Positions 3,401 through 60,626 of a DNA stretch of 64,000 bases are shown piece after piece (position 1 is the first letter of the stretch; every line of letters starts with the position of its first letter). The DNA comes from Eutreptiella sp. 'Long Island Sound 2002' (Eukaryota > Protista > Euglenida), in the NCBI GenBank assembly GCA_964036045.1, contig OZ038378.1, positions 25,978,001-26,042,000 of the forward strand, written 5' to 3'. A program made the position numbers and the translations under genes. The notes under the pieces were generated by a model, which did no database searches, had not been told where the DNA came from, and was given only the letters and a program-made list of their open reading frames with translations.

Positions 3401-4351
3401 TATGCAGTACTGTGTGACAAAGTGCATAGTGCACGGAGTCACACAGTGCCAGCCTCACTGTGTGACAGTGTGCCTGCTACACAGCAGGATACTGTGCCGC
3501 GGCACAGTGTCACAGAGTACCAGGGCACCGGGGCAGCTGCACAGTGTGATAAAGTGCTTCTCGGAGCGCCGGCGTGCCCAGCTTGCCAACGCGGAGACTT
3601 GGACACATCTACACACAACGCAGGAGCGATCACCAGGACTTCACTAGACTGTTCCCGAGCGTCATCTGCAGCCTACTGCGGGACATGCTGCAGTCCACCC
3701 CGGCGGCCGGCCCATGGCAAGAGTATACCTTAAAGAGTATCCGCAGGGGAAGATCTCACGGGGTTTGGCGTGGCAGGCTAGACACTACGCAGTAGCGCCA
3801 CCAGCATGGGTGTGGCCACACCAACTACACCTACCGGATGGCCTACCGGATGCCCGGATGGCGCCCCAAAGGGAGCAGGAGGCCCTGCTACCGATCCGGA
3901 ACCAAGTCTACAATAGGATGTGCAGGGCACACCGCACCGACAGACAACGAAAGAGGCAGTGAATGTGACCACCAAGGACACCTACCAATGGCCACAAATA
4001 TCCCACGCACTCATCGGCACAACCCACAACCGGCAGCTGACCAACAGACGCTTGCTACTTAAGGCCGTGACAGCCGCCCAGGAACACCAGAGAGGGAGGA
4101 GTACCGTACATTGTACACTGTCACTGTACACTGTCACTGTAAAGTTGGTGCGACTTTTTTTGGAGGGGGTGGATGGTAATTTGAGCCCCCCTCTTTGCAG
4201 TCCTTTAACCCGCCCCCCCCCCCCCCCACAGCTACAGCCAGAACCCAAAGAACAGCTGCAGCCACAGTGAAAGCTGCAACTGCAGCCTTCGCCACAGCCA
4301 GGGCCACACACAATGACACAACCACAACCAAATCCACACACAACACAGCTT

Positions 4352-4430
4352 GCAGAAACGCACCCACACCCACACCCACACCCACACCCACACCCACACC
4401 CACACCCACACCCACACCCACACCCACAAC
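4352..4430 (+). repeat. (CACACC)n hexamer microsatellite in a CA/ACC-rich low-complexity tract (~4195-4870)
   Basis: About 11 tandem CACACC units; explains the PT/HP/TH runs in overlapping ORFs. Confidence 0.95.
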
Positions 4431-5643
4431 CAAAGCCGCAACCACAGCCACTACCAAAACCACACCCACAACCGGAGCTACCACAACGGCCATGGCAACA
4501 ACCGCACGCAAGCCCACAACCACAGCTACAACCACAACCACAACCATACCTGCATCTGCAGCCACAAACACAATGTTATGCGCACACAATCAAAGCCTAT
4601 GCCACGCAACACCAAAACCAACAACAACATCCAAAACAACAGCTGCAAAAGCTGCAACACACACACACACACACTGGCACACACACACACCTGCGCGTAC
4701 ACACATTCACGAATCCACATACACATCCGAACCTAGGCAACCAGAAACCAAAGAATGCAGTCACACACTCACAGTGACGCACAAAGACACCTTCGCCCAC
4801 GCATCGATCCAAGCAAGCCCCCCCCCCCCCCCGACTCACACACAAACATACATACAAACACACTAAATGAGAGAAACCAAGAGTGAACAAACCATCTACA
4901 CTTGTGCACATGCGCATGGGCACAAGCACACACACACGAACACACACAATAGCACAACATACCTGCAAAGGTCGTCGTCATTGCCGCCACCATCATGCAC
5001 TCGATGCCATGGCCCAAAAATAGGAAAGGCATGGCAAGGGCAGGGCAAGGGGGCGGGAGGGGATAAGAAGGGAGGGGAATGAATGTGTCATGGTGTAGGT
5101 CAAGATGGTTGTATGATGAACCTCACAAAAGCGAGCAATATCCTCTGTGCCCTATTTGTGCTTCATGGCGCGCGCCCGTGGCTGTGTGTGGGGGGGGTGG
5201 GGGGTGCCATTGTCATGAGGCAACAAGGAACACCCTCGCAAATGGCTAGGTTCATATCCCCGAACCCCAACCCCGTAACCATCTCTCCCTAGCCCTTCAC
5301 TTCGCATGGTTCAATGTGGCCATATGTTTATATGCACCCAAGATAATTGCACACAAGAGTGAATGTGGTTGTCAATTTGTGCATGTGCATGTGTGTGTGG
5401 ACGTGTGTATGGGTGTATGTGTGTGTATGTGTTTGGATATTTGTGTCCCTCACGAAGTGTGCGTGTTTGGATGTTTGTGTGTTTGTCGCGATGGGTACAT
5501 GTATGCAAGTATGTATGTCTGCATGCACGCTCAAGTTCTTGGAGAAAAGACATGGTGACAACTACGGACCAATGTTGGTGTGAAAAGGGTGAAGTGTGGG
5601 CCGGCAAGGGTGGGAAGAGAGGGCGGAAAGGGGGAGAAACTCC

Positions 5644-5790
5644 CGAGTGAGCCCTGAGTGAGCCCCTAATTAGCTCTCACTCAGTGAGCGCTCAGTGAGC
5701 CATTTGGCGCGCTGAGTGAGAGCTAAGTGAGAGCTAAGTGAGCCGGCTCAGTGACAGCTCAATGACGGCTCAGTCGGGGTGCTCAGTCAA
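5644..5790. repeat. 11-bp-period minisatellite of the quasi-palindrome GCTCAGTGAGC
   Basis: (C/G)T(C/G/A)AGTGAG variants recur at ~5646, 5657, 5683, 5694, 5715, 5726, 5737, 5749, 5760, 5771, 5784. Confidence 0.8.
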
Positions 5791-5949
5791 TTAAGCCATC
5801 ACCAAAAAAATACCCCCCTGGTCGAATCCCCTTGGACTAGGGGTTGGGATCCCTTTGGGGACATCCCTAAACCCCACCCAAGCCCCGAAAGCCAAAAAAT
5901 TTCACATGAAACCCATTGAAAAACACCACTTAGCCCCAAATGAGCTGTT

Positions 5950-7261
5950 TTAGCCCCAACTGAGCCCCAACTTCACATTTCCAAGTGAGGCGCAGGTACA
6001 GGCTCGCACCTCGGCTTCCTTCATCCAGGGCTGCACATCGTACACAATGACTGCTTCCTCCCCCTGTCCCTCAGAGCATGAGGACGAAATAGACTTGTCC
6101 GTGTTCGATAGACCTCCATATTCGCCAATTTCCTCATCCGTCCGGTCGTCTATAAACTTCAGCCCCCCTACTATAAGCTCCGGCATGGCGTCTCGTTGCC
6201 ATTCCTCGAAGTGCGACGCCTCCGAGAACCCCAGTTTCACCCTGTTGCGGGCCGTAACCTGCAGGGAGAACTTCTCTCGTGGGATGAGTTTTTGCGTCTC
6301 AGAGCATATCAACCACCAAAGCTGTGTGTTGAGCTCATCATTCCGTCCTCTCGGGAAGCAATGCATCACCATCGGGCAGCTTTGGAATTCCTTGCCGAAG
6401 AATTCGTCATACCTCATGGCTGCAAAGAACGGCGTTTCCGAAACGTGATTAAGCATGTCCGACAGCTTGTGATCTTCCATCGTGTGATATACCATGCGCG
6501 CCATCCCCAACGCACGGGACAGATACGTCACCCAGTCCGGGTCGGATTTGCCCATGCATCGCATTATTTGGTGCAGCTGCTTATTGCCCAGCTGCACTGC
6601 GAAGAGCTTGGCTGGCGTGGGGGCTCACTGCATTTCGAACGAGGTTAGGGGGGGGCCTCCTATGACATGGCCATGGACCCTATCTTGGCGCTCAGGCCCG
6701 CATCTCTATCCTGCTGAGTGGAAGTGAAGACCACAAATTGTTGTTGTTTCCCGGACTCCAGAACGATCGGCCTACTAAGTTCGTGCAGGGATCTGTGTCT
6801 CCACGGAACCTCTTTACTTAGGGCCCCGAGTTCCGGGAGTGTCATCGCTTGGTGGATTTCCAATAAGAGGTCAAGTCTGCCAAATTTTATGATGTGTGAT
6901 ACACATCTGTACCATTTCCCCAATTCAGGGAGCTCCTTCGCATCTGCCACCACCAGTGCGTTAAGCCCATCTTCTTCGTCCGGCAGTAGGGCTCTGATAA
7001 ACTCTTCCGAACGGCCCGTGAGAGCTTGCCACTTGACCGGGTCGTTTCATGTGTCCAGCCTGGACACACTCTGAAATACCACATCTCTACGATCCCACGC
7101 AAACCGAAGAGCAAGTTGCTTTTGTTCCGTTGCCTTGATTGGTGTCGCTGATGACCCTGCTGCCTGCTGCGACATCGCCGCTCTGGCCTCCTCTACCTCT
7201 TCCACAATGGGGGCTGAGAGTGCTGCTCCCCGTTGCTTTCCATGCTTGGCCGGCGATGCCA

Positions 7262-7294
<33 letters not shown>

Positions 7295-9103
7295 CAATGC
7301 CATCTGTACAATATTGCAATTCACACTTGTTACACATGGACATCTTTTCAGGGTCAGACTTGGTGCAACAAATGGCACAAACATCTCCATCATCACCCAT
7401 AACATCCTCATCATCTTTGTCCTCCTGTGTAGGTGTAGTCCATACATGTGCAGGTACGTGTTCCCACGGACCATATGGAGGGTACCGTACTTGTCTTCAA
7501 ATTAAAAATTGTTGCAAATGCAAGAGTACACGCACGTACTCATGAAACTTGGTACCGGATCCCCCCCATATGTTCCTTACGATGCCCCAATGCCACATCA
7601 TGCGTGCAAACAAGTGCTCAATACGTGCCCTATAGAAACCATGAACATCATTGTACTCCCTTTGTCGCTCGGTCAAAGTCTTCCGACCGATAAATGGCCA
7701 TGCCACATGAAGGCGGAAGGTAAACGACAATTGGCACGGTTTCCTCAATGGCACCGGAAGGTTGAAGGCCCACAATTGGGCTAATTGGCTACATCACCCC
7801 TGCCTTCTCGGATCCCCATGGTGGGGAGAAATCGGCGTAGAAAAAGAGTGGGCGTGGTGAAAATGAGCAAAAAATGTGTGCAAAAAGGTAGAAATGGGTG
7901 AAACAAGGTGAAAATCCAAAAAATGCCACATCCCCAATAGATCAAAACCTACTACCAAACAACAACGATGCCCAAATAACCACAAGGTATGGGTTTCCAC
8001 TGCGGCGAGACGCCCAAATAGTTGCACTGCGCGCGCACTACGCTTAAGGCGCCCCCATACATGGTACTAGAAGGATGAAACTCTAGCTTGAGGTCATGAA
8101 CTTCATTTAATGGGTGAGCATATTTTGGTAGAGGCGTATGACAAGCATATTCGGGTTTGCAAACATCTTTTGCCTGATTCGGCTAAACTCAATTTCAAAA
8201 AAAAAATTAAGGAAATGGTTGGAAGTAAAGGTCCTGAAGGGTTTTATCCAAATGCGGTGAAAAGAGGCGGAAAATCCGGTGAAAGAAGAGGTCTTTTGCT
8301 GGCCGAGGTACCCCTAGGTGCATGTACACATTGACATCCCCAAGCCTAGGACTCCTGCCCCTGTGCATCACTAGTCGCATAAAGCAATCACACAACGTAA
8401 TGCACAATCCTATGGTAGACAATGGCCAGGTACGGTGTTACTTGCTCGTACTCTACTACATCAAGCCCCAACTTAAGGGACTTGAGTGCCTTTATCTTGG
8501 TGTAGTATGTGACGGGTTGGTGGGCGAGACGGGCTACGCACTCTTTGGAGGCATTGCGAACATGGTTCATTGGCAAAACTAGTGATGTCTTTGATTGGCA
8601 CGAATGCGTGGCTGGTGCGTTGCAATACAATGGGTAGCACACAGTGGCACACCTTTGGCCATAAACTGCTGCTTACTAGGGCCGAGTTCTTGCACTGCGT
8701 GCGCGCTGCAGTGAACCCCCCCATGCCACCTCTTATAACACGACAAAGCAACAAAGCCAACAGGATAGACATTGAACCACGGCCAACCTGGTTCTTTGAT
8801 GTACCCATGAACATCTCAATTAGCTTTGAAGAGTACAACTATGCAGTGGCATGCAACCAACACGCATCTTTAAGTGGCAACTAGCACACGCTTAGATATC
8901 ATTTGGACGGTGGCCACACAACTAGCAACAAACACCATCGTCGTCTTCCTCCTCTTCCTCGGTAGCATCGTCGTGTGCCCACATAGACTAAGGAACATGA
9001 GGCAAAGGTCCATAAGGCCGATACCTAGTCTGTTTGCAGATACAAAATTGAGACAGCCTTGGGTTCCCGAAGGTACTTCCTCGACACCTATCCCTAGAGG
9101 CAC
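5950..9103 (-). pseudogene. Decayed PIF/Harbinger-ISL2EU-like (DDE_Tnp_4-type) transposase fused in frame to a PHD/RING-like finger and a long C-terminal region
   Basis: YNDVHGFYRARIEHLFARM is the RxxIExxF motif of IS5/PIF-type transposases. ORFs 7775-7497, 7400-7047 and 6953-6660 share one frame, separated only by TGA at 7497 and 7047; CAIC..CNKC..YC finger at ~7300-7380; frameshift at the G/C run ~6650 leads to the 6597-5950 ORF. The N-terminal part (8320-9103) is heavily decayed, with an apparent repeat insertion at ~7790-8310. Confidence 0.6.
7261..7292 (+). repeat. (TG)n microsatellite interrupting the zinc-finger coding region
   Basis: About 14 TG units seen directly. Confidence 0.95.
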
Positions 9104-15479: not shown

Positions 15480-17945
15480 CTACGCACGGTGCTCCACCGC
15501 CTCCGTGTGCACCTTGTAATCCTTGATTCGGGACACGAACTGCTCCGCAATCTGCATCTCCACTGGGTCGGCGTCCGGGCCGTCGCCCGGGATCGTCACG
15601 TTGATGCCCGTGGAGGCCCCGGTGACAATATCGCAGTTGAGGGAGGCAGGGCCCAGAAACAACATGACCTCGTTGCACTTGTCTATGAACACCGATGGCA
15701 ATGTCCCCGTCGCCTGCAGCTCCACACGACTGCAGTTGCAGGCAGTCGCGCTGGCGATGCAATCCGCGAAGCTGATGCCCGTGCGGCGGCAGTTCTGCAG
15801 CGTCAGGGCGTTGATCTTGCCACCCTCGACACGTACCACCACGTCCTCACACTCGTACACATAGATGGACTGGTGGGGCTCCACGGGGCCCAGTGTCAGC
15901 TCCACAGGGGCGCCACGCTTGCCGGTCTGCCACTCCACCACCCATCGCTTGCCATCCTCCAGCTCGACCTTTGGCGTCCCCTTCCTGGCGCCAGAGGCTC
16001 CCGGTCCCGCGGCCGGGCGCGCCCGCGCCGGGGCCGGCGCGGCCGGGACCGGGGCCGGGTCGGCGTCACGCGGGCGATTCTTGGTCTTCATTTCCGGCGT
16101 GACTTTCTTGAGGTGCGCGGTGATGCCACCGCCCTTCGAGTTGATCTCCGCGAAAAGCGCCGCGGCCCCGCCGTCACCGCCGCCGCCGCCAGGCGGACCA
16201 CCAGCCGGAGGGGGTGGGGGGGGACCTGGCGGGGGTGGGGGTGGGGGAGGGGGAGGGGGCGGGGGTGGAGGCGGGCCTGGGGGCGGAGGCGGAGGAGCTT
16301 GTGCTGGGGCGGGGGCGGGGGCACTGGGTACGCCAGGGGCGCCCCACACGACGCCGGTTGTGTGGTGCGCCTTGACATACGCTGACAGAGCCACAAGGGC
16401 GGCCCGCCACTGCTTTGCAAACGCGGTGTGGCGGGCATCGCCCCCTTTCGCAGCGACCAGCACTTTGTTGAGGTAGAAATCCGCGGACCCTACGGCCTCC
16501 GTGACAAAGGGGGCGGGCGTCGGCTCTACGGTGACCCAGGCCGCCGCCTGCAGTCCCTCCACCACCGCGTTTTCGTGCTGCGGATGCTTTGGCGCTTTGC
16601 CAGCCGCCACCCCCATGGCATCGGCAGTGGGCTTGAGGAGTGCCTGCACCTTCTCTGCCTCTGGACGTGGCATGCCACCCGCAGTCATGAGGAACGCGCG
16701 CTGCGCGGTAAACGTCGCCTCCACGGCGCCACCGAGCGCCGCCAGGTCGTCGCCGAGATCCGTGCAAGTCGCCAAGAACGGCTTCACGTACTCCCCATAC
16801 CAGTCGTCATACGCCCCAATGGCTGCGCCCGTTGCGGGTGCTGCCACCGCCCCCGCCCCCGCCGCTGGGGCGGCGGTGCTGGTCTTGAGGCTCCCCCACA
16901 CGACGCCGGTTGTGTGGTGCGCCTTGACATACGCTGACAGAGCCACAAGGGCGGCCCGCCACTGCTTTGCAAACGCGGTGTGGCGGGCGTCGCCCCCTTT
17001 CGCAGCGACCAGCACTTTGTTGAGGTAGAAATCCGCGGACCCTACGGCCTCCGTGACAAAGGGGGCGGGCGTCGGCTCTACGGTGACCCAGGCCGCCGCC
17101 TGCAGTCCCTCCACCACCGCGTTTTCGTGCTGCGGATGCTTTGGCGCTTTGCCAGCCGCCACCCCCATGGCATCGGCAGTGGGCTTGAGGAGTGCCTGCA
17201 CCTTCTCTGCCTCTGGACGTGGCATGCCACCCGCAGTCACGAGGAACGCGCGCTGCGCGGTAAACGTCGCCTCCACGGCGCCACCGAGCGCCGCCAGGTC
17301 GTCGCCGAGATCCGTGCAAGTCGCCAAGAACGGCTTCACGTACTCCCCATACCAGTCGTCATACGCCCCAATGGCTGCGCCCGTTGCGGGTGCAGCCGCG
17401 GCCACCGCCCCCACCGCTGGGGCGGCGGTGCCGGTCTTGAGGCTCCCCCACGCGACGCCGGTCGTATGGTGCGCCTTGACGTACGCCACGAGCGCCGTCG
17501 GGAGCGCGGTCAGAGCGGTGCACCACGCGACGTGCTCTGGGCCGGTGGCCCGGTGCTCCTTCAGGACCTTGTTGAGGTAGAACTGCATGGAGTCCTTGGC
17601 CTCCGCAATGTGTGGGACAGGGGTCGGGCTCACAGTGACCCACGTCAGTGCCCCAAGCCCCTCCTGCAGTGCTTGCGCATGGTTGCCCAGGGGACCGCGC
17701 TTCAGGGTGCCCACAAGGTCCCCAGCGGCGGCCAAGGCCTGGCCGGTTGGCTGCAGGAGTGGCGCAGGGTCAGCCGGTGCAGGCATAGCCACTGCTTGGG
17801 CAAGAAAGTCACGTTGGGCTTCGAAGGCACGCACAGCACTTGCAGCCAGCGGCACAGCATCACCTCCCAACACATCTGACGCTTTGGTAAATGCGCTAAG
17901 GGCATCAGCCAACAGTGCATCATAGTCACTGATGGCCGTCATGAC
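15480..17945 (-). CDS. CAP: Adenylyl cyclase-associated protein (CAP/Srv2) with three tandem HFDs, polyproline tract, WH2 and CARP
   Basis: HFD signatures (NHAQALQEGLGALTWV, FYLNKVLKEHR, YVKAHHTTGVxW) occur three times (~17445-17942, 16893-17375, 16341-16823); poly-Pro ~16200-16300; WH2-like ALFAEINSKGGGITAHLKKV; CARP beta-helix (KRWVVEWQ, IYVYEC, KINALTLQNC, FIDKCNE, GASTGINV, EQFVS). Acceptor-like CCTCTGCAG precedes 17945; ATG at 17942; high GC3. Confidence 0.93.
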   Translation of the reverse strand, partial: VMTAISDYDALLADALSAFTKASDVLGGDAVPLAASAVRAFEAQRDFLAQAVAMPAPADPAPLLQPTGQALAAAGDLVGTLKRGPLGNHAQALQEGLGALTWVTVSPTPVPHIAEAKDSMQFYLNKVLKEHRATGPEHVAWCTALTALPTALVAYVKAHHTTGVAWGSLKTGTAAPAVGAVAAAAPATGAAIGAYDDWYGEYVKPFLATCTDLGDDLAALGGAVEATFTAQRAFLVTAGGMPRPEAEKVQALLKPTADAMGVAAGKAPKHPQHENAVVEGLQAAAWVTVEPTPAPFVTEAVGSADFYLNKVLVAAKGGDARHTAFAKQWRAALVALSAYVKAHHTTGVVWGSLKTSTAAPAAGAGAVAAPATGAAIGAYDDWYGEYVKPFLATCTDLGDDLAALGGAVEATFTAQRAFLMTAGGMPRPEAEKVQALLKPTADAMGVAAGKAPKHPQHENAVVEGLQAAAWVTVEPTPAPFVTEAVGSADFYLNKVLVAAKGGDARHTAFAKQWRAALVALSAYVKAHHTTGVVWGAPGVPSAPAPAPAQAPPPPPPGPPPPPPPPPPPPPPPPGPPPPPPAGGPPGGGGGDGGAAALFAEINSKGGGITAHLKKVTPEMKTKNRPRDADPAPVPAAPAPARARPAAGPGASGARKGTPKVELEDGKRWVVEWQTGKRGAPVELTLGPVEPHQSIYVYECEDVVVRVEGGKINALTLQNCRRTGISFADCIASATACNCSRVELQATGTLPSVFIDKCNEVMLFLGPASLNCDIVTGASTGINVTIPGDGPDADPVEMQIAEQFVSRIKDYKVHTEAVEHRA
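16344..17447 (-). repeat. 552-bp intragenic tandem duplication (HFD2/HFD3 of CAP)
   Basis: Shadow ORFs repeat at +552 (16501 vs 17053); I saw two substitutions in the domain-coding part, more in the linkers. Confidence 0.95.
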
Positions 17946-18139
17946 CTGCAGAGGAGGCATGATCACTGGGGTCTTGAACAACTTCTGACCTGTGCCGAAC
18001 CAAACCTGCAGGCACCGGTCATAATGACGAAGTTTCCCCCAGCAGGAGATTGGAGACCGACCCACTACTACCAACCCAGCCCCTGTGCTTCCATCGTTTG
18101 GCTGCCCCCGCAGCATCTAGGTAAACATATTCACTGTCC

Positions 18140-18480
18140 GTGCAAATGGCCACCTTCTGAAGGTGGAAATCTGCAGAGCCAGGAGCTCTGCTGTGTTCTT
18201 TGTTTGTGAGAGACGCTCTTGAACATATGCAGAAATGTGGACATCAGGGTGAGAGTAAATACCATAACTGGTTGCCCTGCCTACCACCGCCATCTCCTAA
18301 GAGGAGCCATCGGTGAAGACCATGGTGAATCCTTTTGGTGCAAATATATCAAAGTTTCCTCCAACTCGCATTGTTTCGTTCTGTTTGTGTTTTCTGGACG
18401 GGGGCACAGGCAGATTGATGTGTAGGGCAGGGTTTTGAAGCACCGCATCATGCAAAAGAGAATGTAATGCTTTCATGAAG
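18140..18480 (-). pseudogene. RNase H domain relic (non-LTR retrotransposon type)
   Basis: In one frame: MVFTDGSS*EMAVVGRATSYGIYSHPDVHISAYVQERLSQTKNTAELLAL, with the FTDGS and QTNNxAELxA motifs of RNase HI; one TAG. Confidence 0.65.
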
Positions 18481-19049
18481 GTTTTAAGATCATCTTCTAA
18501 TATAGGCAGGTAGCCCAGGGCAGTGGCCCACAGCTCCAAAACCCCGATCCACATGGGTCAAAAGTTTGAGGCCACTTGGAGGGGGGGGGGGGGGATAGAA
18601 AAAAAAATGCCTGACACTGCGCTACAGTGTTATTTTTAGGGGCAACCCCTGGGAGGGCCATGAACGGATACTTAGGGGGCGCCCTTGCACTGCGCGCTAC
18701 TTTCAGACTATGTTCCCCCCAAAGAGCCCCTAGGCACACCCCTTCCAAACGCGCCTAAATTTAGGTCACCCAAACTACCCCAGCAGAAGACCAATGCAAC
18801 CTACCTTACCTTCACATAAGCGCTCCTAAGGACGACCTCATTGGTCGAATCATGTCCGAAATCATGCAAAATTGCCCGAAATCTCCCAAAATCAGACCTG
18901 AATCTGAGACAATGGCAGAGGCGCCAAACACCCAGATATCATAATTAGCTTGTACATAACGTCGGCTGGTGAGTTCTGACCTTCGATGATTTTCCTGAAT
19001 TTTTCGATCTTGATCATCATCATCAATATGCATCATCATGATCATGTAT

Positions 19050-26199: not shown

Positions 26200-28714
26200 T
26201 CACTTAATAGGTCGGCACAGCTTCACAAGAATAGGGGGGCGCTTAGGGACTGGGCCTGAGGCAGCATCAGTGTTTGAGCCGCGCCCAAACCCTGCGGTGG
26301 GGCTTGTGTCAGCGTTATTGCACAGGTCTGGATGAGCAGTAGCGGCATTGCACAGGGGGGCACTAAGGTCAGAAAGGTCCGGAGTGCTTGGAATCTCCCT
26401 CTGTGGGATAACATGGGGGATCTGTGTGCTAACCACAATGTGTGTCACAGAGCAACTAGCCGCAGAAGCAGCAGTAGGCAATGGCCCAGGCAACAGCTCA
26501 CAGCCATCTGAAATAGGGCCATGAGCAGCGGCGGGGCTGCGTAAAGAATCAGGGATGGAGCTGAGATTATTGAGTTGGCAAGGCTGAGGCTCCAGCTTGA
26601 GGCTGAGGTTGGGGTTGGGACCTGAACCCTGGGGCTTGGAGTCCAGACTCAGGTCCGACCCACAGTCAGGGCTGGGCTTGGGGCTAGGGCTGGGGCTGGT
26701 GTCAGGCATGAGGTTTGCGCTGGATTGCTCGCCTTGCGGGTTAGGGGTCAGCTGTGCAGTCGAGTGGGAAAGCGGCTTGTGGTCAGAGGACACAACGACA
26801 CGCTCTTTGTTCTTGGTTCTGGCGGGTGTGTCACCGTTAGGCTTGGGTGTGCTCAGGCTGAGGGCAGTACTGGCAGTCAGGCTGTCAACGGGGTCAGAGC
26901 AAGGGCTGGGCTGAGGGCTAGGGCCAGCCTTACTTTGAGCACTCCGCTCAGCACGCACTGCAGCAGAAGGCTCAGGATGAAGCTTCCCACAGGAGTCCGG
27001 CCCGGGGGGCGGCCCAGGGCCGGGGCTCTGCGGCTCCGCCTTCGGCGCAGCAGTCCGGCAGCCACCCCCTGGCCCCATCCGCTTCTCCTGCGCCCCTCTC
27101 TTGCCCCCACTGCCCTTTTTGCCGGCCCGGCCCGAGGCCCGCTTGCCTTTGGCAATGCCCCCGCAGCTGCTTCGGGCGGTGGGTGTGGGGCCGGCAGCCT
27201 GGCGTTGCAGTGCCAGTTCAGGGATGCCCGCCGTGATGGGCGCCCACCGGGAGCGAGACTTGGGGTACGGCTTGTGGACGGCTGCTACTGAGGGGAGCTT
27301 GGCTGGAGGGCCGGGGTGGGCAAAGGTGATGGCGGGCGCCGGAGGCAGGTCCGCACAGGTCTGCTTTGTGGGGCGTGGGTTCTCGGCACCACTCAGACGA
27401 GGGCGCTTGGCCGTCACCTTGGCCGCTTTCTGAGACCTGGGGCCCGGGCAAGGGCCGGCTCCCGAGCAGGGTGTACGCTGGCGCTCCGCATTGGTACAGC
27501 TTGGCGTCGGAGGGGGTATGGGGGGCAGGCCTGTGCTCGGACTGACGGAGCGTGGCCGTTTCGCAGTCTGTTTCGGCGCCCGGGGCATGGCATTGGATGC
27601 AGGTTGGGCGGCAGGCTTCGGGCCTGAGGTGGATTTGGGCTGTGCTTTGGTGGTGGTTGCCTTCCGGGAGGCGGGCACATTGGTAGCGCTGGGCATGCCA
27701 TGGGCAGGGGCAGGGGCAGAAGAAGTAGTGGTAGAGGTAGAGGTAGAGGTAGATTTGGGCTTTGAGGCAGATGAAGAAACAGACTTGGGGGTGGGAGTAA
27801 TACTGGAGGCAGCTGACGAGGCTGTGCTGGAATTGGCCTCGGGCTGTGAGGCAGCAGCAGAGGGTGGGTTTGACTTGGATTTATGAGCAGGCGTTGTAGT
27901 GGAGGCCGCCTTCTGGTTAGTAACAGGGGCAGTGACAGGATCAGAAGTGGGTGCCGGATTAGGGGTGACGGTAGGCTTTGCCTTGGCAGAATTCGGCTTG
28001 ATAGTGGGCGCAGGGACCGGGAGAGGGGTATGTGCAGCGGCAGGGGAAGGGGCAGGGTCAGGGGTGGAGGTTGCCTTTGTACTAGGGGCAGGGGCAGCGG
28101 TGGGCTTGGCATGTGAGGTCAGGTTGCACTTGTGATCAGGGGCCGACACAGGGACGCCCTCGGGTTGGGACGGCCCCCCCGGAGTGACGGCAGATTGTTG
28201 GGAGAGACTGGGCCGCCCGCGCTTCCGCTTGGCCGCCGGAGTGGCCGGGTCGGCTGTGATAGGCCTGCCCCGCTTTTGGCCCCTTGGGGCTTTGGGTCCC
28301 GCCTTAAAGGCTGACGAGGTGCCCTTGGCAGGGAGGGGCAGGGCCTTGCCCTCAGCCTTCCCAGAGCCAGTCTTCCATGTGGGTGCCTTGAGGGGGCCGG
28401 GCTTGGCCGGAGGCACAGCCACGGTCTCAGGGACAGGGGTGGAGCCCACCAGGCGGCGTGAAGCCTTCAGGGAGGCCTTCAGGGTGGCCTGGACGCGTGC
28501 CCAGTGCTCTGGGGTCAGGTCTGCTGCGTATGTGCGGTCCAGGACGGGCACGGACGGCTTGCAGGGGGCGCGCAGGGGCCGCAGGGTGGTGAGGTGGTGG
28601 GCCAGGGTCTCAACCAGGACAGCACCCTCGGGCTGGTCCTCAGGTAAAAGGCTGCAGTCCACCATCTCAACTTCGTTCACTGCCCACCTGTCGCCCTGAC
28701 GGAAGAGATCGACC
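26200..28714 (-). CDS. Last exon of ATP-grasp-domain gene: (R)VD...NEVE motif plus ~810 aa Pro/Ala/Ser/Thr/Lys-rich tail
   Basis: Acceptor CTTTCCACAG|G at 28714 (phase 2); VDLFRQGDRWAVNEVEMVDCSLLPE is the ATP-grasp C-terminal motif; open frame to the stop at 26200. Confidence 0.75.
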
Positions 28715-29699
28715 CTGTGGAAAGGTGCAGGCCATGGACAAAGTTGAGGATTGCTAACCCAGGCATTATTCCTCATTACCAAAATGGAGTCAAATTCCAG
28801 GTTGCTTCTCCACTTTTCAGGGGTTGCAGCGGGAATTTTTCGCTGTGGGATATTTCGAAGCGGGTTTATTTCGCATGCAGTCCTGAATTTGCTGTGGGAA
28901 ATGTCGCACCCACATGCTGTGAGCCTGCCTTTGGTTGCTGGTGGTTTCTGTTATTTGCTAATGCTTTGTTGTTCCTTCCTAGTGGCTTGTTGTGAATTCC
29001 TTGAGGGTTGCTGTTAATTCTTCGTCTCTTGCTGTTGCCTTTTTCGAGTATGCAGCCCGGTGCGTTTTACGGTGTGCTCCAGCAGTGGCTTTCAAGTGCT
29101 GGGCCATTGCAAGAAATCTTCTCCTGGCGTTCATGTGTTTTGGGCTGGTGCAGGGGGGGGATTCTCGGAAATCGGATATCATGCTTAAAACCCCCCCCAG
29201 AGCCAAATTTAAAAAAGGGGGGGGTTTTGGGGGGGGGGGGGTTTAAGGGGGTTTTTCGCTGCGCGGGGGTATTGTCCGCGGGAAGGGCACCCGCCCCCCA
29301 ACCCCCCCCCAATGAAATACATAGTGTCGGGCACCTCCGAACAGTTGGGTATGCGGCCCAGGTGTGATCCGACAATTCGCACCGCCCCTACCAACGTCTA
29401 TGGTAGGGTTTCATCGGCTTGGGTATTTCCGGCCGTGGGTGCCAGAAACCTCGAGACTGTGGGTCTCCGAGGCGGTCATGGGGTTCGAAATACACCATGG
29501 GGTTAGAATTGCAGCATGGGGGTTGAAACGCATCAAGGTGGGTCATGGGGTTCGGAATGCATCATGGGGTTAGAAATACACCATGGGGTGCGTCAAGGGG
29601 AGGGCATAAAAGAAGGGGTGTGTATGTGACTATACTGTCGGCCAACGCAACTCGGGAGGCCCTTAAGGCTATGGCGGGCCACGCCTCCCTCCCCGCGCC

Positions 29700-40141: not shown

Positions 40142-41836
40142 TCAGTGGGGTACAAAAACCACCCCATATGGTTTCACTTGATCCAGAGACTGCGTTAGTT
40201 TAGACCATATATTGGCAGCGCGTCGGGTAGCGTCCCTGATGTGGGCGGCATTGAGGGACCGTACCCGTGACAGTGGGTCAGCGGGCTGCAAGTGGCTCGG
40301 CACCCATGTGACGTGCAGTGTGAGCTGGGACGTCCTGAGCCTGTGAACTACCGTCCGAAGGATGCGTTGCTGTTTCCAGTGCTGCGTGCGTGCGCGCAGA
40401 TTTATAGTACCCCCAATGGTCTGCGTGTTATCCTGGAGCATAGTGACTTGAGGGAGTCGTCTGGAGATAGCAAATTTGACCAGGATAGACATACCATACA
40501 TCTCCGCAACTTGCTGAGTGGAAATCCAGGCTGGACACTCAAAAACCCAACCCCTGCCTGAGGTATAGAGACCCACGCCATAGCGCACTCGACCCCGGTC
40601 ATTGACATATTCGGCAGCATCGACCGCCAGCCATTTAGCAAAGAGCCAGGACTGGGACAAGACAAGTGGCGGCCTGAAATCGGGCATGGCCACAAGGGCC
40701 GCAGACACAAGGGACCTCCAAAATGTACCGGTTACCCGGATATATTCAGATCGATTGTAAGAAACCGCCGTCCAGACCCCAGCCAGAAATGGAAGGTGCC
40801 CCTTCTTGGGCACAGCGAGCCATCCTATAAGACCCAGGACACGTATCACAGTCTTAGTGCGCACAACACGTCCGTGAATATTTATAAGGGCCGAAAAAAC
40901 ACGGGTGCGCAAATACTGAGAGTTGCCTATAGATAGCCGACGCAGATCTATGTCCTTGCCCAACCAGGTGGTGCCCTGGACAGGCTCAAGCTGACTCTTC
41001 TGTGAGATAATATATCCCTGGTGCTGTAAAACCCTCGGCAACATGCGACCACACATCTCCAACCAGGGCCTGTCTTCCTGGACGAAAAGCAGATCATCCA
41101 GGTAGTGGTCATAATCCACCGCACTACCGTCAGTGTTTGGCCTCGGGTGTGGCATGCAAGCCAGGCTGGCGGTCACAGACCTACCCACCACCTCCTGGCA
41201 GATGGCAGGGGACAGTTTCCACCCGAATGGGAGGGAGCGGAGATCACAGGTGGACTCATCCGGTCCCTGGACCCGAAAAGTGCCCCAAGCAGACTCAGGG
41301 AGCCGGAGCGAAGGAAAGCAATTCGTAAGGTCTAGCTTAATGAGCCACCTGTCAGGAGAGGCACTGCGGGGCATAGCTGCCCAGCGAATGAATTTGCTCC
41401 TGAGCGTGTGCAAATTGGGCAGGACCATTCGCGGCTTAGGTCCACAATGGGCCTGGTTGCCTAGGGTACAATTAACAATAAAAGAGCATTTGGTGGCAGT
41501 TTTAGGTATTACAAAAATGGGTGCACTGGGCGCACGTCCGCAACCGCGCATGTCGTCATGAATGACAGACAAGTGACCCTGTCGAATCAGCGCCCAAGTC
41601 ATAGCTAACTCCTCAGGACGAAGGCTTTTCCGGGGCACTTCCACACTGGACATAGCAGAGAGTGCCTGGCGTGTGGCAATGCGGTCCCAAATATCCTGAG
41701 GTATCGGGACCTCCCCTGCGGGCCCCAGACCCATCTCAGCAATCTGAACTGGCACCTGTAAATGGCCCCTCTGGTTTGTACACCCCGGACCTGGAGACGC
41801 CCCCTTCTTGGGACTAGTGGGGGACAGCCAACACAT
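40142..41836 (-). CDS. Reverse transcriptase plus DIRS-type RNase H
   Basis: IKLDLTNCFPSL, LPFGWKLSPAICQ, HYLDDLLF; RNase H residues in AVDAAE, VAEMY, LQDN, QPADPLSR. No methyltransferase domain evident. Confidence 0.93.
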   Translation of the reverse strand: MCWLSPTSPKKGASPGPGCTNQRGHLQVPVQIAEMGLGPAGEVPIPQDIWDRIATRQALSAMSSVEVPRKSLRPEELAMTWALIRQGHLSVIHDDMRGCGRAPSAPIFVIPKTATKCSFIVNCTLGNQAHCGPKPRMVLPNLHTLRSKFIRWAAMPRSASPDRWLIKLDLTNCFPSLRLPESAWGTFRVQGPDESTCDLRSLPFGWKLSPAICQEVVGRSVTASLACMPHPRPNTDGSAVDYDHYLDDLLFVQEDRPWLEMCGRMLPRVLQHQGYIISQKSQLEPVQGTTWLGKDIDLRRLSIGNSQYLRTRVFSALINIHGRVVRTKTVIRVLGLIGWLAVPKKGHLPFLAGVWTAVSYNRSEYIRVTGTFWRSLVSAALVAMPDFRPPLVLSQSWLFAKWLAVDAAEYVNDRGRVRYGVGLYTSGRGWVFECPAWISTQQVAEMYGMSILVKFAISRRLPQVTMLQDNTQTIGGTINLRARTQHWKQQRILRTVVHRLRTSQLTLHVTWVPSHLQPADPLSRVRSLNAAHIRDATRRAANIWSKLTQSLDQVKPYGVVFVPH

Positions 41837-42075
41837 GTGGCAAGCAGCTCAGCAAATTGTAAATGTTTGACAGTGTCCAACACAAACCGAACATATTGAA
41901 ACGAGTCTAACCTACGAACAAACTCCACCGCCACCATAAACACAGCAAACAGAGGCCTCCACAGCTGAGCAAACGTCCAGCGTGGTGGTAGCGCCGAGCC
42001 GACCGCCAAAGTTGGGACCGCCACTGGTGGATTTGACGAGAGGAATAACCATGCGAAGGCCGCATGGACAGGACA

Positions 42076-43458
42076 TCATCGAACTCCGGCCCCCGAGGTC
42101 TGTGCTGTCCTGCGGGCCTTGTTGGCGAGCGACGTGAGTCGGGCGGTATCCTTAGAGATGTTAATCGTGGCTGGTCTTTTGTGCCTGGCCGGGAGTTTCC
42201 GGGGTACGCGCTTGCCGGCACCGACATTGAAGTCCTGGACCACTCGGCTCCCACTCGGTTGTTTCGGTACCTCTGTACGTGGTGGGTTCGGACCTTTGGT
42301 CGATGCATCGGCCCCAGGCCGTTTCTTGGGTTCGGGAAGGTCAGGATCCGCTGACCGCGCTGCCCTCTTGAATCCCTGGACTGGAACTCCCACGTCGAAC
42401 TGAACATCAGGGGCACCAGACTGGATGTCCACGTCATCAGCTCCCGAGTCGTCCGTACACCACTCCAGGGCCGTGTCACGGATGAAGTGACGGGGGGGCC
42501 ATAGGCTGCTGGCCTTGAAGTCCCTCCATTCATAGCGCCAGTCGCCCACCGAGCCTGGAATGATGACTGGCCATGGGACCTTGCCTCTCGCCCATGGCAC
42601 CCCATCCCATCGGGCAACGTATTTTCTAGCCACTCGCAGTGACCTCCAGCGACCCCACTGGAGCAGCTCCGGCATGGTACCGCCTGCGCGCATAAACATC
42701 GTCGCCCCCGCGCGCCGCCACGCGTGCCATGTGATACCATGGAACTCGGTACCCTCGAGGAGTCTGGACATGGTGGCGGATAGGGCCCGAGTGCCCCCTG
42801 CGATGACAGGGAGGTAGGGCGATCGCCCCTGGATGCTGACTTGAAGCCGCATGAAGCCAGATAGTCTGTCAATATAGCTCCCAGCCGGCCTGGTGACCCA
42901 CTGCCGCTTGGTCTTTTGGTCGAAAAAACGGATAGATGACTTGCTCTGGAGTAGGTCGACGGCCCGAATGCTCGCCGCTTCCCCAATTCTGAGGCAGTAC
43001 GCTGTAGACAGGATGGCCAGCGATGTGACCAGGCGTTCGTGTGGTGACTGCGCCCTGCGTCCCATGACTTCCAAGACTTCCAGCGAGCCCCAACGCTGTG
43101 ATCTGCCTGCCCCCGCGAGCCTCTCTTTACCGCGAACGAGTCGCCATGCGTTGGACGGGACAAATGTGGGGCAGATGTCAAGCTCCTCCAGTAGCGTGCA
43201 CGCACTGATTGCCTGTCGCATGCCAGATGCCGTGGTGTGACGTTGAGCCAGCCCGAAAAGGTACTTCCGTAGGATGATCTTAGGGTCCCTGGCGTCCGAT
43301 GTGAACTGTGTGGTAGCCATTGCTTTGATGTGGTTGGCATAGACCTGGAGTGTCGAGTTGGCCCACGATGCGAGTGCGACAGTCCTCCAGTCTGTCGGGT
43401 TTTCCTTCTGGCGTAGGTCGTCAAGTCGTTGGGCCCATTGTGAGAAACCTTCTTCCAC
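42076..43458 (-). CDS. Tyrosine recombinase
   Basis: CLRIGEA (R), DQKTKR (K), WHAWRRAGAT (HxxR), GRWRS (W), RKY (Y). Confidence 0.93.
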   Translation of the reverse strand: MEEGFSQWAQRLDDLRQKENPTDWRTVALASWANSTLQVYANHIKAMATTQFTSDARDPKIILRKYLFGLAQRHTTASGMRQAISACTLLEELDICPTFVPSNAWRLVRGKERLAGAGRSQRWGSLEVLEVMGRRAQSPHERLVTSLAILSTAYCLRIGEAASIRAVDLLQSKSSIRFFDQKTKRQWVTRPAGSYIDRLSGFMRLQVSIQGRSPYLPVIAGGTRALSATMSRLLEGTEFHGITWHAWRRAGATMFMRAGGTMPELLQWGRWRSLRVARKYVARWDGVPWARGKVPWPVIIPGSVGDWRYEWRDFKASSLWPPRHFIRDTALEWCTDDSGADDVDIQSGAPDVQFDVGVPVQGFKRAARSADPDLPEPKKRPGADASTKGPNPPRTEVPKQPSGSRVVQDFNVGAGKRVPRKLPARHKRPATINISKDTARLTSLANKARRTAQTSGAGVR

Positions 43459-43515
43459 CTCATCAGGGGGACAGGGCTCGTGCCCACTGCCCTGCCTGGA
43501 CCCTGAGGAGCCGCT

Positions 43516-44520
43516 TCAGCGCCTGTGGCGTCGGGAGCATTTCCACTCCCAGTGGCGTCCTCCACAGAAATCGCAGTCGCCCGGTGGAGGGCGGTCCGTG
43601 CGCCAGCGTTTGCCACTGGCAAAGACAACGTACTCAATCCCATCGATTGCACAGAAGCGGAATTTCCCACGGTAGTAGTACTCGACCTCGGTATCATCCC
43701 CTGACGAACCAGCAGACTCTGAGCGGGCTGATCTAGATCGGGAGCGAGAGCGGGATCTGGAGCGACGGTGTCGTCGTCCCCTGTCAGATCGGGACCTCCT
43801 GGGTGACCTGGACTTAGAACGGCGCTTTTTCTTAGAACTCTTAGATCCTTTACCAAACCTGGCGTACTTTCTCTCATACTGCTTCTGGGCTTTCACCACC
43901 AGGGCCCAAATGTCACTGGCTTGGATCACAGGAGGGTCATCCAGGATATTTTCTTCAACAGCATTTGACACCATGTCCAGGACATCAATCATCCATCCAG
44001 TTAGACCAGTAGTGGAGTCTCTGTAGTCCTGGATGGTCTGCACAGTGAGGGGGAGCGCCAGCCAGTCCTCCTTGGACGATCGAGATCTCTCTTTCTCCGC
44101 TCTAGCCAACCCCTTTTCCAGTTCCTCGATTTTGGACTCCAGGGCCTTTATGGACGCCTTCTTCTCGGTTTCGGAGGTCGATGATTTGCGTGACCCACTG
44201 GCCTGTCTCAGGGGCATAAATTTGCCGGTCTCTGGCAGGTATCGGGATTTGTGTACCTCTTCCCAGGCGAACAAAATATCTAATATTTTCTCTGGGGGGA
44301 TGTCCATAGCCAGCTGAGTCTTGAGAGCATTGGAAACTTGTGGTACATTGTGGCCAGCCTGCGCCCACCGGACGGACATCTCAGCTACGCCATTGGCGAG
44401 TTTGTCTGGTGACACCCTGGTCACCCATAGTGGAAATGCGTGCTCGACAAACGCCCGTACCGCCGCCAATTCTGGCTCTTCCTCGGCAGGGCGCTTCTTG
44501 ACGTTGTTTTCGGACGGCAT
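43516..44520 (-). CDS. Gag-like ORF1 with coiled coil, RS-rich segment and C-terminal CX2CX3HX4C knuckle
   Basis: First ORF after repeat A1; IKALESKIEELEKGLARAE; RSRSRSRSRSRS; CDFCGGRHWEWKC. Confidence 0.8.
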   Translation of the reverse strand: MPSENNVKKRPAEEEPELAAVRAFVEHAFPLWVTRVSPDKLANGVAEMSVRWAQAGHNVPQVSNALKTQLAMDIPPEKILDILFAWEEVHKSRYLPETGKFMPLRQASGSRKSSTSETEKKASIKALESKIEELEKGLARAEKERSRSSKEDWLALPLTVQTIQDYRDSTTGLTGWMIDVLDMVSNAVEENILDDPPVIQASDIWALVVKAQKQYERKYARFGKGSKSSKKKRRSKSRSPRRSRSDRGRRHRRSRSRSRSRSRSARSESAGSSGDDTEVEYYYRGKFRFCAIDGIEYVVFASGKRWRTDRPPPGDCDFCGGRHWEWKCSRRHRR

Positions 44521-60284: not shown

Positions 60285-60626
60285 CTGAGAAAGCATGCAC
60301 AGCCGCAAGTGCAGCTCCATTTGGGCTGACTCAGATGTGTGCACAGGTACCACCGAAAGTCCCCCCTCCCTTTGTCATTCTCCCCATGCGCGTGACGGCC
60401 CCCAACGCCCCAGGGGACGGTTGCTGAGTGACGGTCCTCGCCCAAGGGGGCAGTACTTTGAATATTCGCAGTAGCAGCAGACCAAAGACTGAGAAGGTTA
60501 TTGGGTCCTCTGCTCCCAGGATGGTGTGACTGACCATTGGTTCACGCCTCCCAGTGTGCTTGTTCAAGCCCTACCTGGATGCAGACACCCAAAATGGCTT
60601 CCCTGAATCGTCCACCTCAAAGGCAA

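What the first reader, a model, noticed from the sequence alone, without database searches (positions are those of the whole stretch)
15480..17945. CAP/Srv2 with three tandem HFDs: a possible single-chain route to the six-HFD assembly
Seen: one exon encodes HFD-HFD-HFD-polyPro-WH2-CARP, with no RLE-type N-terminal coiled coil in the ORF. Established: yeast Srv2 and mammalian CAP1 have one HFD; an N-terminal oligomerisation domain assembles HFDs into hexamers that, with cofilin, accelerate actin pointed-end depolymerisation; CARP domains dimerise. Inference: three HFDs per chain times a CARP dimer would present six HFDs without the oligomerisation domain. I know of no such architecture but could not search.
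Basis: partly seen in the sequence, partly recalled or inferred. Interest (0 to 1): 0.8.

Follow-up and report, generated by a model that had tools for sequence, protein, structure and literature searches.

The report
CAP protein with three tandem HFDs
This is an intact gene for an actin-recycling CAP/Srv2 protein with three copies of its filament-end-binding domain in a row and no N-terminal oligomerisation motif; database searches show similar multi-copy CAPs in many protist lineages, so it belongs to a recurring variant that I could not find described in the literature.

Summary
On the minus strand, 15480-17942 is one uninterrupted ORF encoding HFD-HFD-HFD-polyPro-WH2-CARP. Pfam finds CAP_N three times (E 1e-113) and CAP_C once (E 2e-41). 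Pfam finds no CAP_N-CM oligomerisation motif in the protein, and a purpose-built profile finds none anywhere in the 64-kb window. HFD2 and HFD3 are an exact 552-bp tandem duplication: 498 of 500 bases match in the core, but only about 88% in the linker.

An environmental orthologue (53% identity) has the same architecture on a polyadenylated transcript contig with an in-frame stop in its 5' UTR. In that relative, neither an upstream coiled-coil exon nor HFD skipping occurs.

The architecture is not unique. Of the 150 best cluster representatives found with one HFD, 44 carry 2-6 HFDs. They come from amoebozoans, red algae, diplonemids, a kinetoplastid, a ciliate, a nucleariid and a nematode. 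None of the 13 representatives with three or more HFDs that start with Met has the motif, against 52 of 98 single-HFD CAPs.

HFD copy number varies from 2 to 6, so "six" is not a conserved target. The best reading is that tandem HFDs supply in one chain the multivalency that the motif supplies in canonical CAPs. I rate it a new variant of a known kind, of moderate interest.

The parts
15480..17942 (-). CAP/Srv2 coding sequence: 820 codons plus the stop at 15480-15482, with the start at ATG 17942. The ORF stays open up to an ATG at 18116, but that extension has no homology support.
17448..17927 (-). HFD1 (CAP_N), the diverged copy. It is 51-54% identical to HFD1 of the orthologue P0172.
17367..17447 (-). 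Linker 1: 27 residues, Ala/Gly/Pro-rich, predicted disordered.
16896..17366 (-). HFD2 (CAP_N). It is 54% identical to HFD2 of P0172.
16815..16895 (-). Linker 2: 27 residues, predicted disordered.
16344..16814 (-). HFD3 (CAP_N), 99% identical to HFD2. It is of the HFD2 type, not the HFD3 type seen in the orthologue.
16342..17445 (.). Two tandem 552-bp units (16342-16893 and 16894-17445). The HFD cores match at 498 of 500 bases and the linkers at 46 of 52.
16173..16340 (-). Proline-rich region P1 (poly-Pro and Gly), predicted disordered.
16083..16163 (-). WH2 motif (short helix plus LKKV). It aligns to the WH2 of human CAP1.
15489..15977 (-). CARP domain (CAP_C, Pfam model positions 2-157 of 157), a beta-helix that includes the C-terminal strands.
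17943..17960 (-). Pyrimidine-rich tract ending in AG, 3 nt upstream of the ATG. It could be a cis- or trans-splice acceptor; this was not tested.
18022..18560 (-). Degenerate RNase H-like retroelement remnant abutting the 5' end of the gene (outer bounds only). It overlaps the unsupported 5' extension of the ORF.
   Evidence: PF00075 E 0.015, below Pfam's cut-off

Best explanation
The locus is a real, intact, intronless gene for a cyclase-associated protein (CAP/Srv2) that lacks the N-terminal coiled-coil oligomerisation motif and carries three helical folded domains (HFDs) joined by 27-residue flexible linkers. These are followed by the usual poly-Pro, WH2 and CARP modules. It belongs to a recurrent class of tandem-HFD CAPs, found in many lineages, that I did not find described in the literature.

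Proposed mechanism (inferred). In canonical CAP, two HFDs must sit on the two terminal subunits of a cofilin-decorated pointed end, and oligomerisation through the N-terminal motif raises activity by avidity. Here the multivalency is built into the chain. Neighbouring HFDs of one molecule would engage the two terminal actin subunits, and a third would be ready to replace the one that leaves with the released monomer. The WH2-CARP half would then recycle that monomer. If the CARP domain dimerises as in other CAPs, the particle would carry six HFDs, but the copy number is evolutionarily labile and six is not a fixed target.

History (inferred from unit identities). The ancestor shared with the environmental orthologue already had three diverged HFDs. 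In this lineage the third was recently overwritten or replaced by a copy of the second, through gene conversion or unequal crossing-over.
For: The domains are shown.

The motif is absent from the protein. A 22-position profile built from 78 sequences finds nothing in the six-frame translation of all 64 kb (best E 4.1; earlier).

Orthologue P0172 (53% identity, same domain boundaries, HFD starting at residue 6) lies on a 2,920-nt contig that ends in poly(A) and has an in-frame stop in its 108-nt 5' UTR. This is a mature mRNA without a motif-encoding exon and with all three HFDs.

Unit orthology: WIN_H1 matches P0172_H1 at 51-54%. WIN_H2 and WIN_H3 both match P0172_H2 at 54% and P0172_H3 at 46%. 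P0172 H2 and H3 are only 44% identical to each other.

Divergence between the two 552-bp units is uneven, 99.6% in the core and 88% in the linker. This fits a conversion tract better than an assembly duplicate.

Class-wide pattern among the 150 best representatives: HFD counts per protein are 1:106, 2:30, 3:5, 4:4, 5:4, 6:1. The motif is present in 52 of 98 single-HFD proteins, 6 of 26 two-HFD proteins and 0 of 13 proteins with three or more. In 12 of those 13 the first HFD starts within 20 residues of the Met. Fisher p = 1.6e-4, not corrected for phylogeny. Pfam confirms no PF01213 hit in any checked protein with three or more HFDs.

Literature: a monomeric HFD needs more than 20-fold higher concentration, and GST dimerisation restores activity (PMC6876575). 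Activity rises from monomer to tetramer, and two HFDs are seen on the two terminal subunits (PMC13048244).

The aromatic pair that holds actin's D-loop (F-Y) is kept in all three HFDs.
Against: No expression data exist for this locus itself. The oligomeric state and CARP dimerisation are untested.

The salt-bridge pair equivalent to mouse CAP1 Arg118/Glu119 is not kept. HFD1 has Val-Gly there, and HFD2 and HFD3 have a 5-residue deletion in that loop. Actin binding by each HFD is therefore not assured, although alignment in this loop is uncertain.

HFD copy number among relatives ranges from 2 to 6, which does not support a specific six-HFD design.

The comparison of motif presence with copy number uses metagenomic ORFs, some of them truncated. 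For example, P0038 is a shortened form of a motif-bearing two-HFD CAP. The comparison is also not phylogenetically independent.

The AF2 model gives no confident inter-domain arrangement (pTM 0.37).
Confidence: 0.6

Rival explanations
1. The third HFD is an assembly artefact or an unfixed, very recent duplication, and the real or typical gene has two HFDs.
For: HFD2 and HFD3 differ at only 2 of 500 core bases. No reads were available to check the junctions.
Against: The orthologue's mRNA also has three HFDs. The two units are not identical, and divergence is uneven, 99.6% in the core and 88% in the linker. The period is exactly 184 codons and the frame is kept. HFD1 is too different (about 42% protein identity) to have caused a mis-join. 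The contig is 875 kb and its name carries '34x', which I read as coverage by inference only. Near-identical internal HFD units are common in relatives, for example Namystynia H1-H3 at 74-79% and P0033 H3-H5 at 81-84%.
Confidence: 0.08
2. The protein does oligomerise through a coiled coil, supplied by an undetected upstream exon or by a separate partner protein, so the tandem HFDs add to the oligomerisation motif instead of replacing it.
For: A splice-acceptor-like tract ending in AG lies 3 nt before the ATG. Some two-HFD CAPs do keep the motif, such as the P0003 cluster. A 22-residue motif split by an intron could escape the profile search.
Against: No motif match was found anywhere in about 46 kb upstream or in the rest of the window. 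The 5' flank is a degenerate retroelement remnant. The orthologue's mature mRNA has an in-frame stop upstream of a start that aligns with this one. No protein with three or more HFDs has the motif.
Confidence: 0.1
3. Only some of the HFDs bind actin. HFD2 and HFD3, whose actin-contact loop is shortened, would serve as spacers or bind another ligand, so the protein is functionally closer to a monovalent or divalent CAP.
For: HFD2 and HFD3 have a 5-residue deletion where mouse CAP1 has Arg118/Glu119. HFD1 has Val-Gly at that position. This pair is [RK][ED]-like in about 75% of single-HFD CAPs but only in a minority of units from multi-HFD proteins.
Against: The F-Y pair that coordinates the D-loop is kept in all three HFDs. 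All three fold confidently as six-helix bundles. HFD2 and HFD3 score as well against CAP_N as HFD1 does (177 and 176 bits against 171). Relaxed conservation of single contacts is what avidity would allow.
Confidence: 0.17
4. The locus is a non-functional processed retrocopy in a repeat-rich, gene-poor region.
For: The gene has no introns. A degenerate RNase H-like remnant abuts its 5' end, and a reverse-transcriptase ORF lies 22 kb away. Few other convincing genes are in the window.
Against: The 820-codon frame is intact across GC-rich, slippage-prone sequence. GC3 is 0.74-0.84 over most of the gene. All domains score at full length. The relative is also encoded by one continuous ORF.
Confidence: 0.05

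Closest known systems
Canonical CAP/Srv2 (mouse/human CAP1, yeast Srv2; PDB 6rsw, 6rsq, 9q7o, 9y9j, 6fm2, 1k8f)
   Same: It has the HFD six-helix bundle: 32% identity, with TM-score 0.94 normalised to the target and rmsd 1.0 A to 6rsw_C in a search of the whole model. It also has the poly-Pro region, a WH2 with LKKV, and a CARP beta-helix. The F-Y D-loop contact is kept.
   Different: It has three HFDs per chain instead of one. It has no N-terminal coiled-coil motif (PF01213 absent). The equivalent of the Arg118/Glu119 contact pair is not conserved.
Environmental orthologue P0172/P0024 (JGI 3300052695 transcript contig L001)
   Same: It has the same HFD x3 - polyPro - WH2 - CARP architecture, with domain boundaries within a few residues and the same N-terminus. 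Identity is 53% overall and 58% over WH2-CARP.
   Different: Its three HFDs are all diverged from one another (42-44%). In the window protein, HFD3 is a 99% copy of HFD2.
Euglenozoan multi-HFD CAPs: Namystynia karyoxenos P0025 (4 HFD + CARP), Diplonema ambulator P0037 and Apiculatamorpha spiralis P0042 (2 HFD + CARP)
   Same: They lack the motif, the first HFD starts at about residue 3-6, the HFDs are in tandem, and a CARP domain follows. Namystynia also has near-identical internal units.
   Different: The copy number differs and identity is only 33-38%. Kinship with the window organism is not established.
Proteins found as HFD arrays without a CARP domain: Nolandella and Pyxidicula (4 HFDs), Rhizamoeba and Lithocolla (3), Porphyridium purpureum KAA8499829.1 (5), Compsopogon (4)
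   Same: They are tandem HFDs without the oligomerisation motif.
   Different: The recorded product has no poly-Pro, WH2 or CARP. For ORF-called genomic entries this may be a gene-calling artefact: in L004 a CARP ORF follows the six-HFD ORF 0.6 kb downstream.
Artificially dimerised HFD (HFD-GST) and motif-swap constructs in Kotila et al. 2019 and Purde et al. 2019
   Same: The principle is the same: HFD valency, not the native coiled coil, determines pointed-end activity (PMC6876575; PMC13048244 citing PMC6888645).
   Different: Those are laboratory constructs that join HFDs through a heterologous oligomeriser. Here the joining is natural, covalent and head-to-tail.
C-CAP-only proteins of apicomplexans and Leishmania (e.g. 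PDB 2b0r)
   Same: They show that CAP domain content is evolutionarily plastic (PMC12472444).
   Different: They represent the opposite change: the HFD is lost altogether instead of being multiplied.

Membership tests
CAP/Srv2 (cyclase-associated protein) | Helical folded domain (Pfam CAP_N, PF21938) | tested here: met
   There are three full-length matches, summed E 1.1e-113. My own HMM gives 171, 177 and 176 bits. The whole-model Foldseek search gives TM-score 0.94 (normalised to the target) to 6rsw_C; the aligned HFD is not identified.
CAP/Srv2 (cyclase-associated protein) | C-terminal CARP beta-helix domain (Pfam CAP_C, PF08603) | tested here: met
   E 1.6e-41 over model positions 2-157 of 157. 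TM-score 0.85 (normalised to the target) to 6fm2_B.
CAP/Srv2 (cyclase-associated protein) | Proline-rich region followed by a WH2 motif between the HFD and CARP | tested here: met
   A poly-Pro tract and an LFAEIN...LKKV segment align to the WH2 of human CAP1. A helix is predicted at protein residues 594-602.
CAP/Srv2 (cyclase-associated protein) | N-terminal coiled-coil oligomerisation motif (Pfam CAP_N-CM, PF01213; the RLE repeats) | tested here: not met
   Pfam finds no hit at E <= 0.01. A profile search of the six-frame translation of the window finds nothing. The HFD starts 5 residues after the start codon.
CAP/Srv2 (cyclase-associated protein) | Actin-contact residues of the HFD (mouse CAP1 Arg118/Glu119 and the Tyr/Phe pair at 162/163) | tested here: inconclusive
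   The aromatic pair is kept in all three HFDs. The Arg/Glu pair is not kept: HFD1 has Val-Gly, and HFD2 and HFD3 have a loop deletion (residues from PMC6876575). Alignment in this loop is uncertain.
CAP/Srv2 (cyclase-associated protein) | CARP-mediated dimerisation and higher-order (tetramer or hexamer) assembly | not testable with these tools
   Only a single-chain model was possible. The C-terminal strands are present.
Tandem-HFD CAPs lacking the oligomerisation motif (class delineated here) | Two or more full-length HFDs head-to-tail in one polypeptide | tested here: met
   This protein has three. Among the 150 best representatives, 44 are comparable.
Tandem-HFD CAPs lacking the oligomerisation motif (class delineated here) | No oligomerisation motif, and the first HFD starts within about 20 residues of the initiator Met | tested here: met
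   Here the HFD starts at residue 6. The same holds in 12 of 13 Met-starting representatives with three or more HFDs and in the orthologue's mRNA.

The most novel reading that the evidence does not exclude
Tandem-HFD CAPs without the oligomerisation motif are a recurrent, independently evolved solution in which HFD valency is written into the gene (2 to 6 copies, tuned by unequal crossing-over or gene conversion). The natural series of copy numbers, with and without a CARP dimeriser, would then show what valency pointed-end depolymerisation needs. That bears directly on the unresolved tetramer-versus-hexamer question for canonical CAP.
Probability: 0.4. Interest if true: 0.7.

Novelty: new variant of a known kind. 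Interest (0 to 1): 0.5.

Why it matters
CAP is one of the few actin regulators found across eukaryotes. Its pointed-end activity depends on how many HFDs act together, yet the native oligomeric state (hexamer or tetramer) is still disputed (PMC13048244, PMC6888645, PMC8113726).

A natural family in which the coiled coil is dropped and HFDs are concatenated 2-6 times shows that evolution has repeatedly reached multivalency by a second route. It also provides ready-made molecules of defined valency for structural comparison.

For annotation, it shows that "adenylyl cyclase-associated protein" labels hide at least three architectures: motif plus one HFD, tandem HFDs without the motif, and C-CAP only. 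Neither my four word searches nor the reviews I consulted returned a description of multi-HFD CAPs.

Its value lies in the class it points to.

Tried and rejected
1. Exact look-up of the 826-residue product starting at Met53 found nothing. The collection holds the 878-residue prokaryote-style call, so no eukaryotic gene model exists for comparison.

2. Naming the organism failed. Rfam found no RNA genes in the window. The large neighbouring ORFs have no Pfam hits, and the two I translated (26203-28782 and 58024-60300) are low-complexity or repetitive. The 363-residue ORF at 48741-49829 matched only unnamed ENA proteins on other long contigs (0.08-1 Mb). BLAST of the CARP domain and HFD1 against all fetched proteins gave no clear taxonomic affinity beyond the unnamed P0172 cluster. 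A euglenozoan affinity (Namystynia, Diplonema and Apiculatamorpha among the named hits) is only a weak lead.

3. I considered a polyprotein that is cleaved into single HFDs and rejected it. Nothing supports it, and the linkers are plain Ala/Gly/Pro.

4. I first counted many relatives as lacking a CARP domain. L004 shows that ORF-called genomic entries can miss a downstream CARP exon, so only the transcriptome-derived complete ORFs are treated as good evidence for HFD-only proteins.

5. GC3 did not discriminate between the candidate start codons.

6. Four word searches for natural multi-HFD CAPs returned nothing relevant. Reading passages of a CAP review and the CAP section of a Leishmania actin review also turned up no mention. 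The library lacks most subscription-journal papers, so absence there is not proof.
Full report
**What is there.** The minus strand carries one long ORF, 15480-18116 (878 codons). It stands out from its surroundings: GC is 0.69 against about 0.5, and GC3 is 0.74-0.84 over most of its length. Pfam finds CAP_N (PF21938) in three stretches (E 1.1e-113) and CAP_C (PF08603) once, at ORF residues 714-876 (E 1.6e-41), and nothing else. Profiles I built from relatives place the HFDs at ORF residues 64-223, 251-407 and 435-591, and the CARP domain at 714-875. No other CAP fragment lies anywhere in the window. Between HFD3 and the CARP domain lie a long poly-Pro/Gly tract and a WH2 motif with LKKV that aligns to human CAP1.

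An AlphaFold2 model built on a 41-sequence alignment has mean pLDDT 84. It shows three six-helix bundles (pLDDT mostly above 90), two disordered 27-residue linkers, a disordered Pro-rich region, a short WH2 helix and a beta-helix. It gives no confident inter-domain packing (pTM 0.37). In the Foldseek search of the whole model, mouse CAP1 HFD 6rsw_C is the best match (TM-score 0.94 normalised to the target, rmsd 1.0 A over 168 columns); the output does not say which HFD was aligned. The CARP structure 6fm2_B scores 0.85.

**The start codon and the missing oligomerisation motif.** Homology to relatives begins at the Met at 17942; another Met lies six codons upstream, at 17960. The HFD starts five residues after that Met. 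The 58-codon extension up to 18116 has no homologue. It overlaps, in another frame, a degenerate RNase H-like retroelement remnant with outer bounds about 18022-18560. That remnant is interrupted by at least one stop and one frame change, and its Pfam match is weak (PF00075 E 0.015, below the cut-off). Pfam finds no CAP_N-CM (PF01213) in the protein. A 22-position profile of that motif, built from 78 sequences, finds nothing in the six-frame translation of the whole window, which covers about 46 kb upstream of the gene (best E 4.1 over six residues; an earlier three-sequence profile gave the same result). A pyrimidine-rich tract ending in AG lies 3 nt before the ATG. It could be a cis- or trans-splice acceptor, and I could not test which.

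**The duplication.** Units 16342-16893 and 16894-17445 are an exact 552-bp (184-codon) tandem repeat. In the 500-bp HFD core they differ at two positions, one synonymous and one Val/Met. In the 52-bp linker they differ at six. HFD1 is 42% identical to HFD2 and HFD3 at the protein level. The uneven divergence, the preserved frame and the non-identity argue against a simple assembly duplicate. They fit a gene-conversion tract laid over an older repeat.

**The window's source.** The window is part of ENA metagenome assembly ERZ25074135, contig ctg10318_34x_l (875,522 bp; window = record 10409-74408, reversed). I could not access reads.

**Relatives.** The word-index search with the whole protein found proteins with four CAP_N domains and no CARP from the amoebozoans Nolandella and Pyxidicula. 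It also found a marine cluster with the motif, two HFDs and a CARP domain. Because the claim rests on absence of relatives, I ran the exhaustive representative search with one HFD (ORF residues 249-409). It gave 715 representatives at E <= 1e-3. Re-scanning the 150 best with my HFD, CARP and motif profiles gave HFD counts of 1:106, 2:30, 3:5, 4:4, 5:4 and 6:1. Because ranking is by summed score, multi-HFD proteins are enriched at the top of the list, so 44 of 150 is not a frequency among all CAPs.

Named sources of multi-HFD proteins include:
- Namystynia karyoxenos (4 HFDs + CARP);
- Diplonema ambulator and Apiculatamorpha spiralis (2 + CARP);
- Tetrahymena utriculariae (3 + CARP);
- Caenorhabditis auriculariae (2 + CARP);
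- Porphyridium purpureum KAA8499829.1 (5);
- Compsopogon (4);
- Lithocolla (3);
- Rhizamoeba (3).

Four word searches returned no paper describing them, and the passages I read in a CAP review and a Leishmania actin review do not mention them. The library lacks most subscription-journal papers, so this absence is weak evidence.

**The orthologue.** The closest relative is the cluster P0024/P0172 from JGI sample 3300052695. P0172 (840 aa) is 53% identical overall and has HFDs at 6-165, 192-353 and 380-541 and a CARP domain at 678-837. In the window protein, numbered from the Met at 17942, the matching positions are 6-165, 193-349, 377-533 and 656-817. Its contig L001 (2,920 nt) ends in a poly(A) run and has an in-frame stop in the 108 nt before the ATG. 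It is therefore a transcript. In this lineage the mature mRNA encodes all three HFDs and no upstream coiled coil.

Unit comparison shows WIN_H1 matching P0172_H1 at 51-54%. WIN_H2 and WIN_H3 both match P0172_H2 at 54% and P0172_H3 at 46%, while P0172 H2 and H3 are only 44% alike. I infer that three HFDs are ancestral to both, and that in the window's lineage the third was recently replaced by a copy of the second.

Homogenised units flanked by diverged, orthologous edge units recur in other lineages. Examples are Namystynia H1-H3 at 74-79%, P0033 H3-H5 at 81-84% and P0034 H2-H4 at 65-77%. This is the usual behaviour of tandem repeats under unequal exchange.

**Does copy number replace the oligomerisation motif?** Among representatives that begin with Met, my motif profile hits 52 of 98 single-HFD proteins, 6 of 26 two-HFD proteins and 0 of 13 proteins with three or more HFDs. 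In 12 of those 13 the first HFD begins within 20 residues of the Met. Fisher p for single against three-or-more is 1.6e-4. Pfam independently shows no PF01213 hit in any checked protein with three or more HFDs, and does show it in P0003 and P0004.

Three caveats apply. The test is not phylogenetically corrected. Many entries are metagenomic ORFs; P0038, for instance, is a truncated form of a motif-bearing two-HFD CAP. And "no CARP" is unreliable for ORF-called genomic entries. In L004 the six-HFD ORF (3980-7348) is followed 0.6 kb downstream, on the same strand, by an ORF encoding polyPro-WH2-CARP (7860-8591), with an acceptor-like site in front of it. This is probably one gene with an intron.

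**Mechanism.** Published work establishes four points. The HFD binds the pointed face of actin. Two HFDs occupy the two terminal subunits. A monomeric HFD needs more than 20-fold higher concentration, and artificial dimerisation restores activity. Activity rises from monomer to tetramer (PMC6876575; PMC13048244). The native state of CAP is disputed between hexamer and tetramer (PMC13048244; PMC6888645; PMC8113726), so "six" is not a firm target even for canonical CAP.

I infer that here multivalency is supplied in cis. A 27-residue flexible linker is, by my estimate, long enough to let neighbouring HFDs reach the two terminal subunits, whose bound HFD N-termini lie within 5 nm of each other (PMC6876575). 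A CARP dimer would double the count to six. Relatives with 2, 3, 4 and probably 6 HFDs per CARP-bearing chain show that valency is labile, not fixed at six.

One observation cuts the other way. The aromatic F-Y pair that holds actin's D-loop is kept in all three HFDs, but the equivalent of mouse Arg118/Glu119 is not. HFD1 has Val-Gly there, and HFD2 and HFD3 have a five-residue deletion. Across the data set this pair is [RK][ED]-like in about 75% of single-HFD CAPs but only in a minority of units from multi-HFD proteins. That could mean weaker individual sites tolerated because of avidity, or functional divergence of some units. I keep the second possibility as a rival at 0.17.

**Verdict.** The locus is a member of a recurrent class of tandem-HFD CAPs that I could not find described in the literature. 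I rate it a new variant of a known kind, with interest 0.5. For the retroelement remnants I give only outer bounds and counts.

Noticed in passing
window 18022-18560 (-): A degenerate RNase H-like retroelement remnant abuts the CAP start codon. It is interrupted by at least one stop and one frame change, and its Pfam match is weak (PF00075 E 0.015). It explains the unsupported 58-codon 5' extension of the ORF.
   Followed up: partly
window 40145-44538 (-): A run of three consecutive long ORFs lies on one strand. The last has a reverse-transcriptase domain (RVT_1 E 7e-8), and the first ends in a Cys/His-rich stretch. This is probably a retrotransposon; its integrity was not assessed.
   Followed up: no
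window 58024-60300 (-): An ORF of 759 codons consists largely of about four near-identical acidic Ala/Gly/Asp/Glu-rich repeats of roughly 124 residues. It has no Pfam match.
   Followed up: no
window 26203-28782 (-): An 860-codon, GC-rich ORF encodes a Ser/Pro/Ala/Lys-rich, apparently disordered product with no Pfam match. Long ORFs also occur on the opposite strand, so coding status is uncertain.
   Followed up: no
window 48741-49829 (-): A 363-residue ORF with no Pfam match has 47-82% identical partial relatives on five other long contigs (0.08-1 Mb) from ENA, probably the same assembly. It is a multi-copy, possibly mobile, gene family.
   Followed up: partly
window 3985-4863: A simple-sequence region translates as (His-Pro)n, (Cys-Gly)n and poly-Val/Ala in different frames, consistent with microsatellite-like repeats.
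   Followed up: no
L004 3980-8591 (Logan SRR23272279): A 1,122-residue ORF has five clear HFDs and one degenerate N-terminal HFD. After a 0.6-kb AT-rich gap, a polyPro-WH2-CARP ORF follows on the same strand. This is probably a single CAP gene with six HFDs and one intron. The exons were not joined.
   Followed up: partly
L001 1-2920 (JGI 3300052695): The orthologue's contig is a complete polyadenylated transcript. Its first bases might include a spliced leader, which could reveal the lineage. This was not tested, because no reference leader sequence was available from a tool.
   Followed up: no
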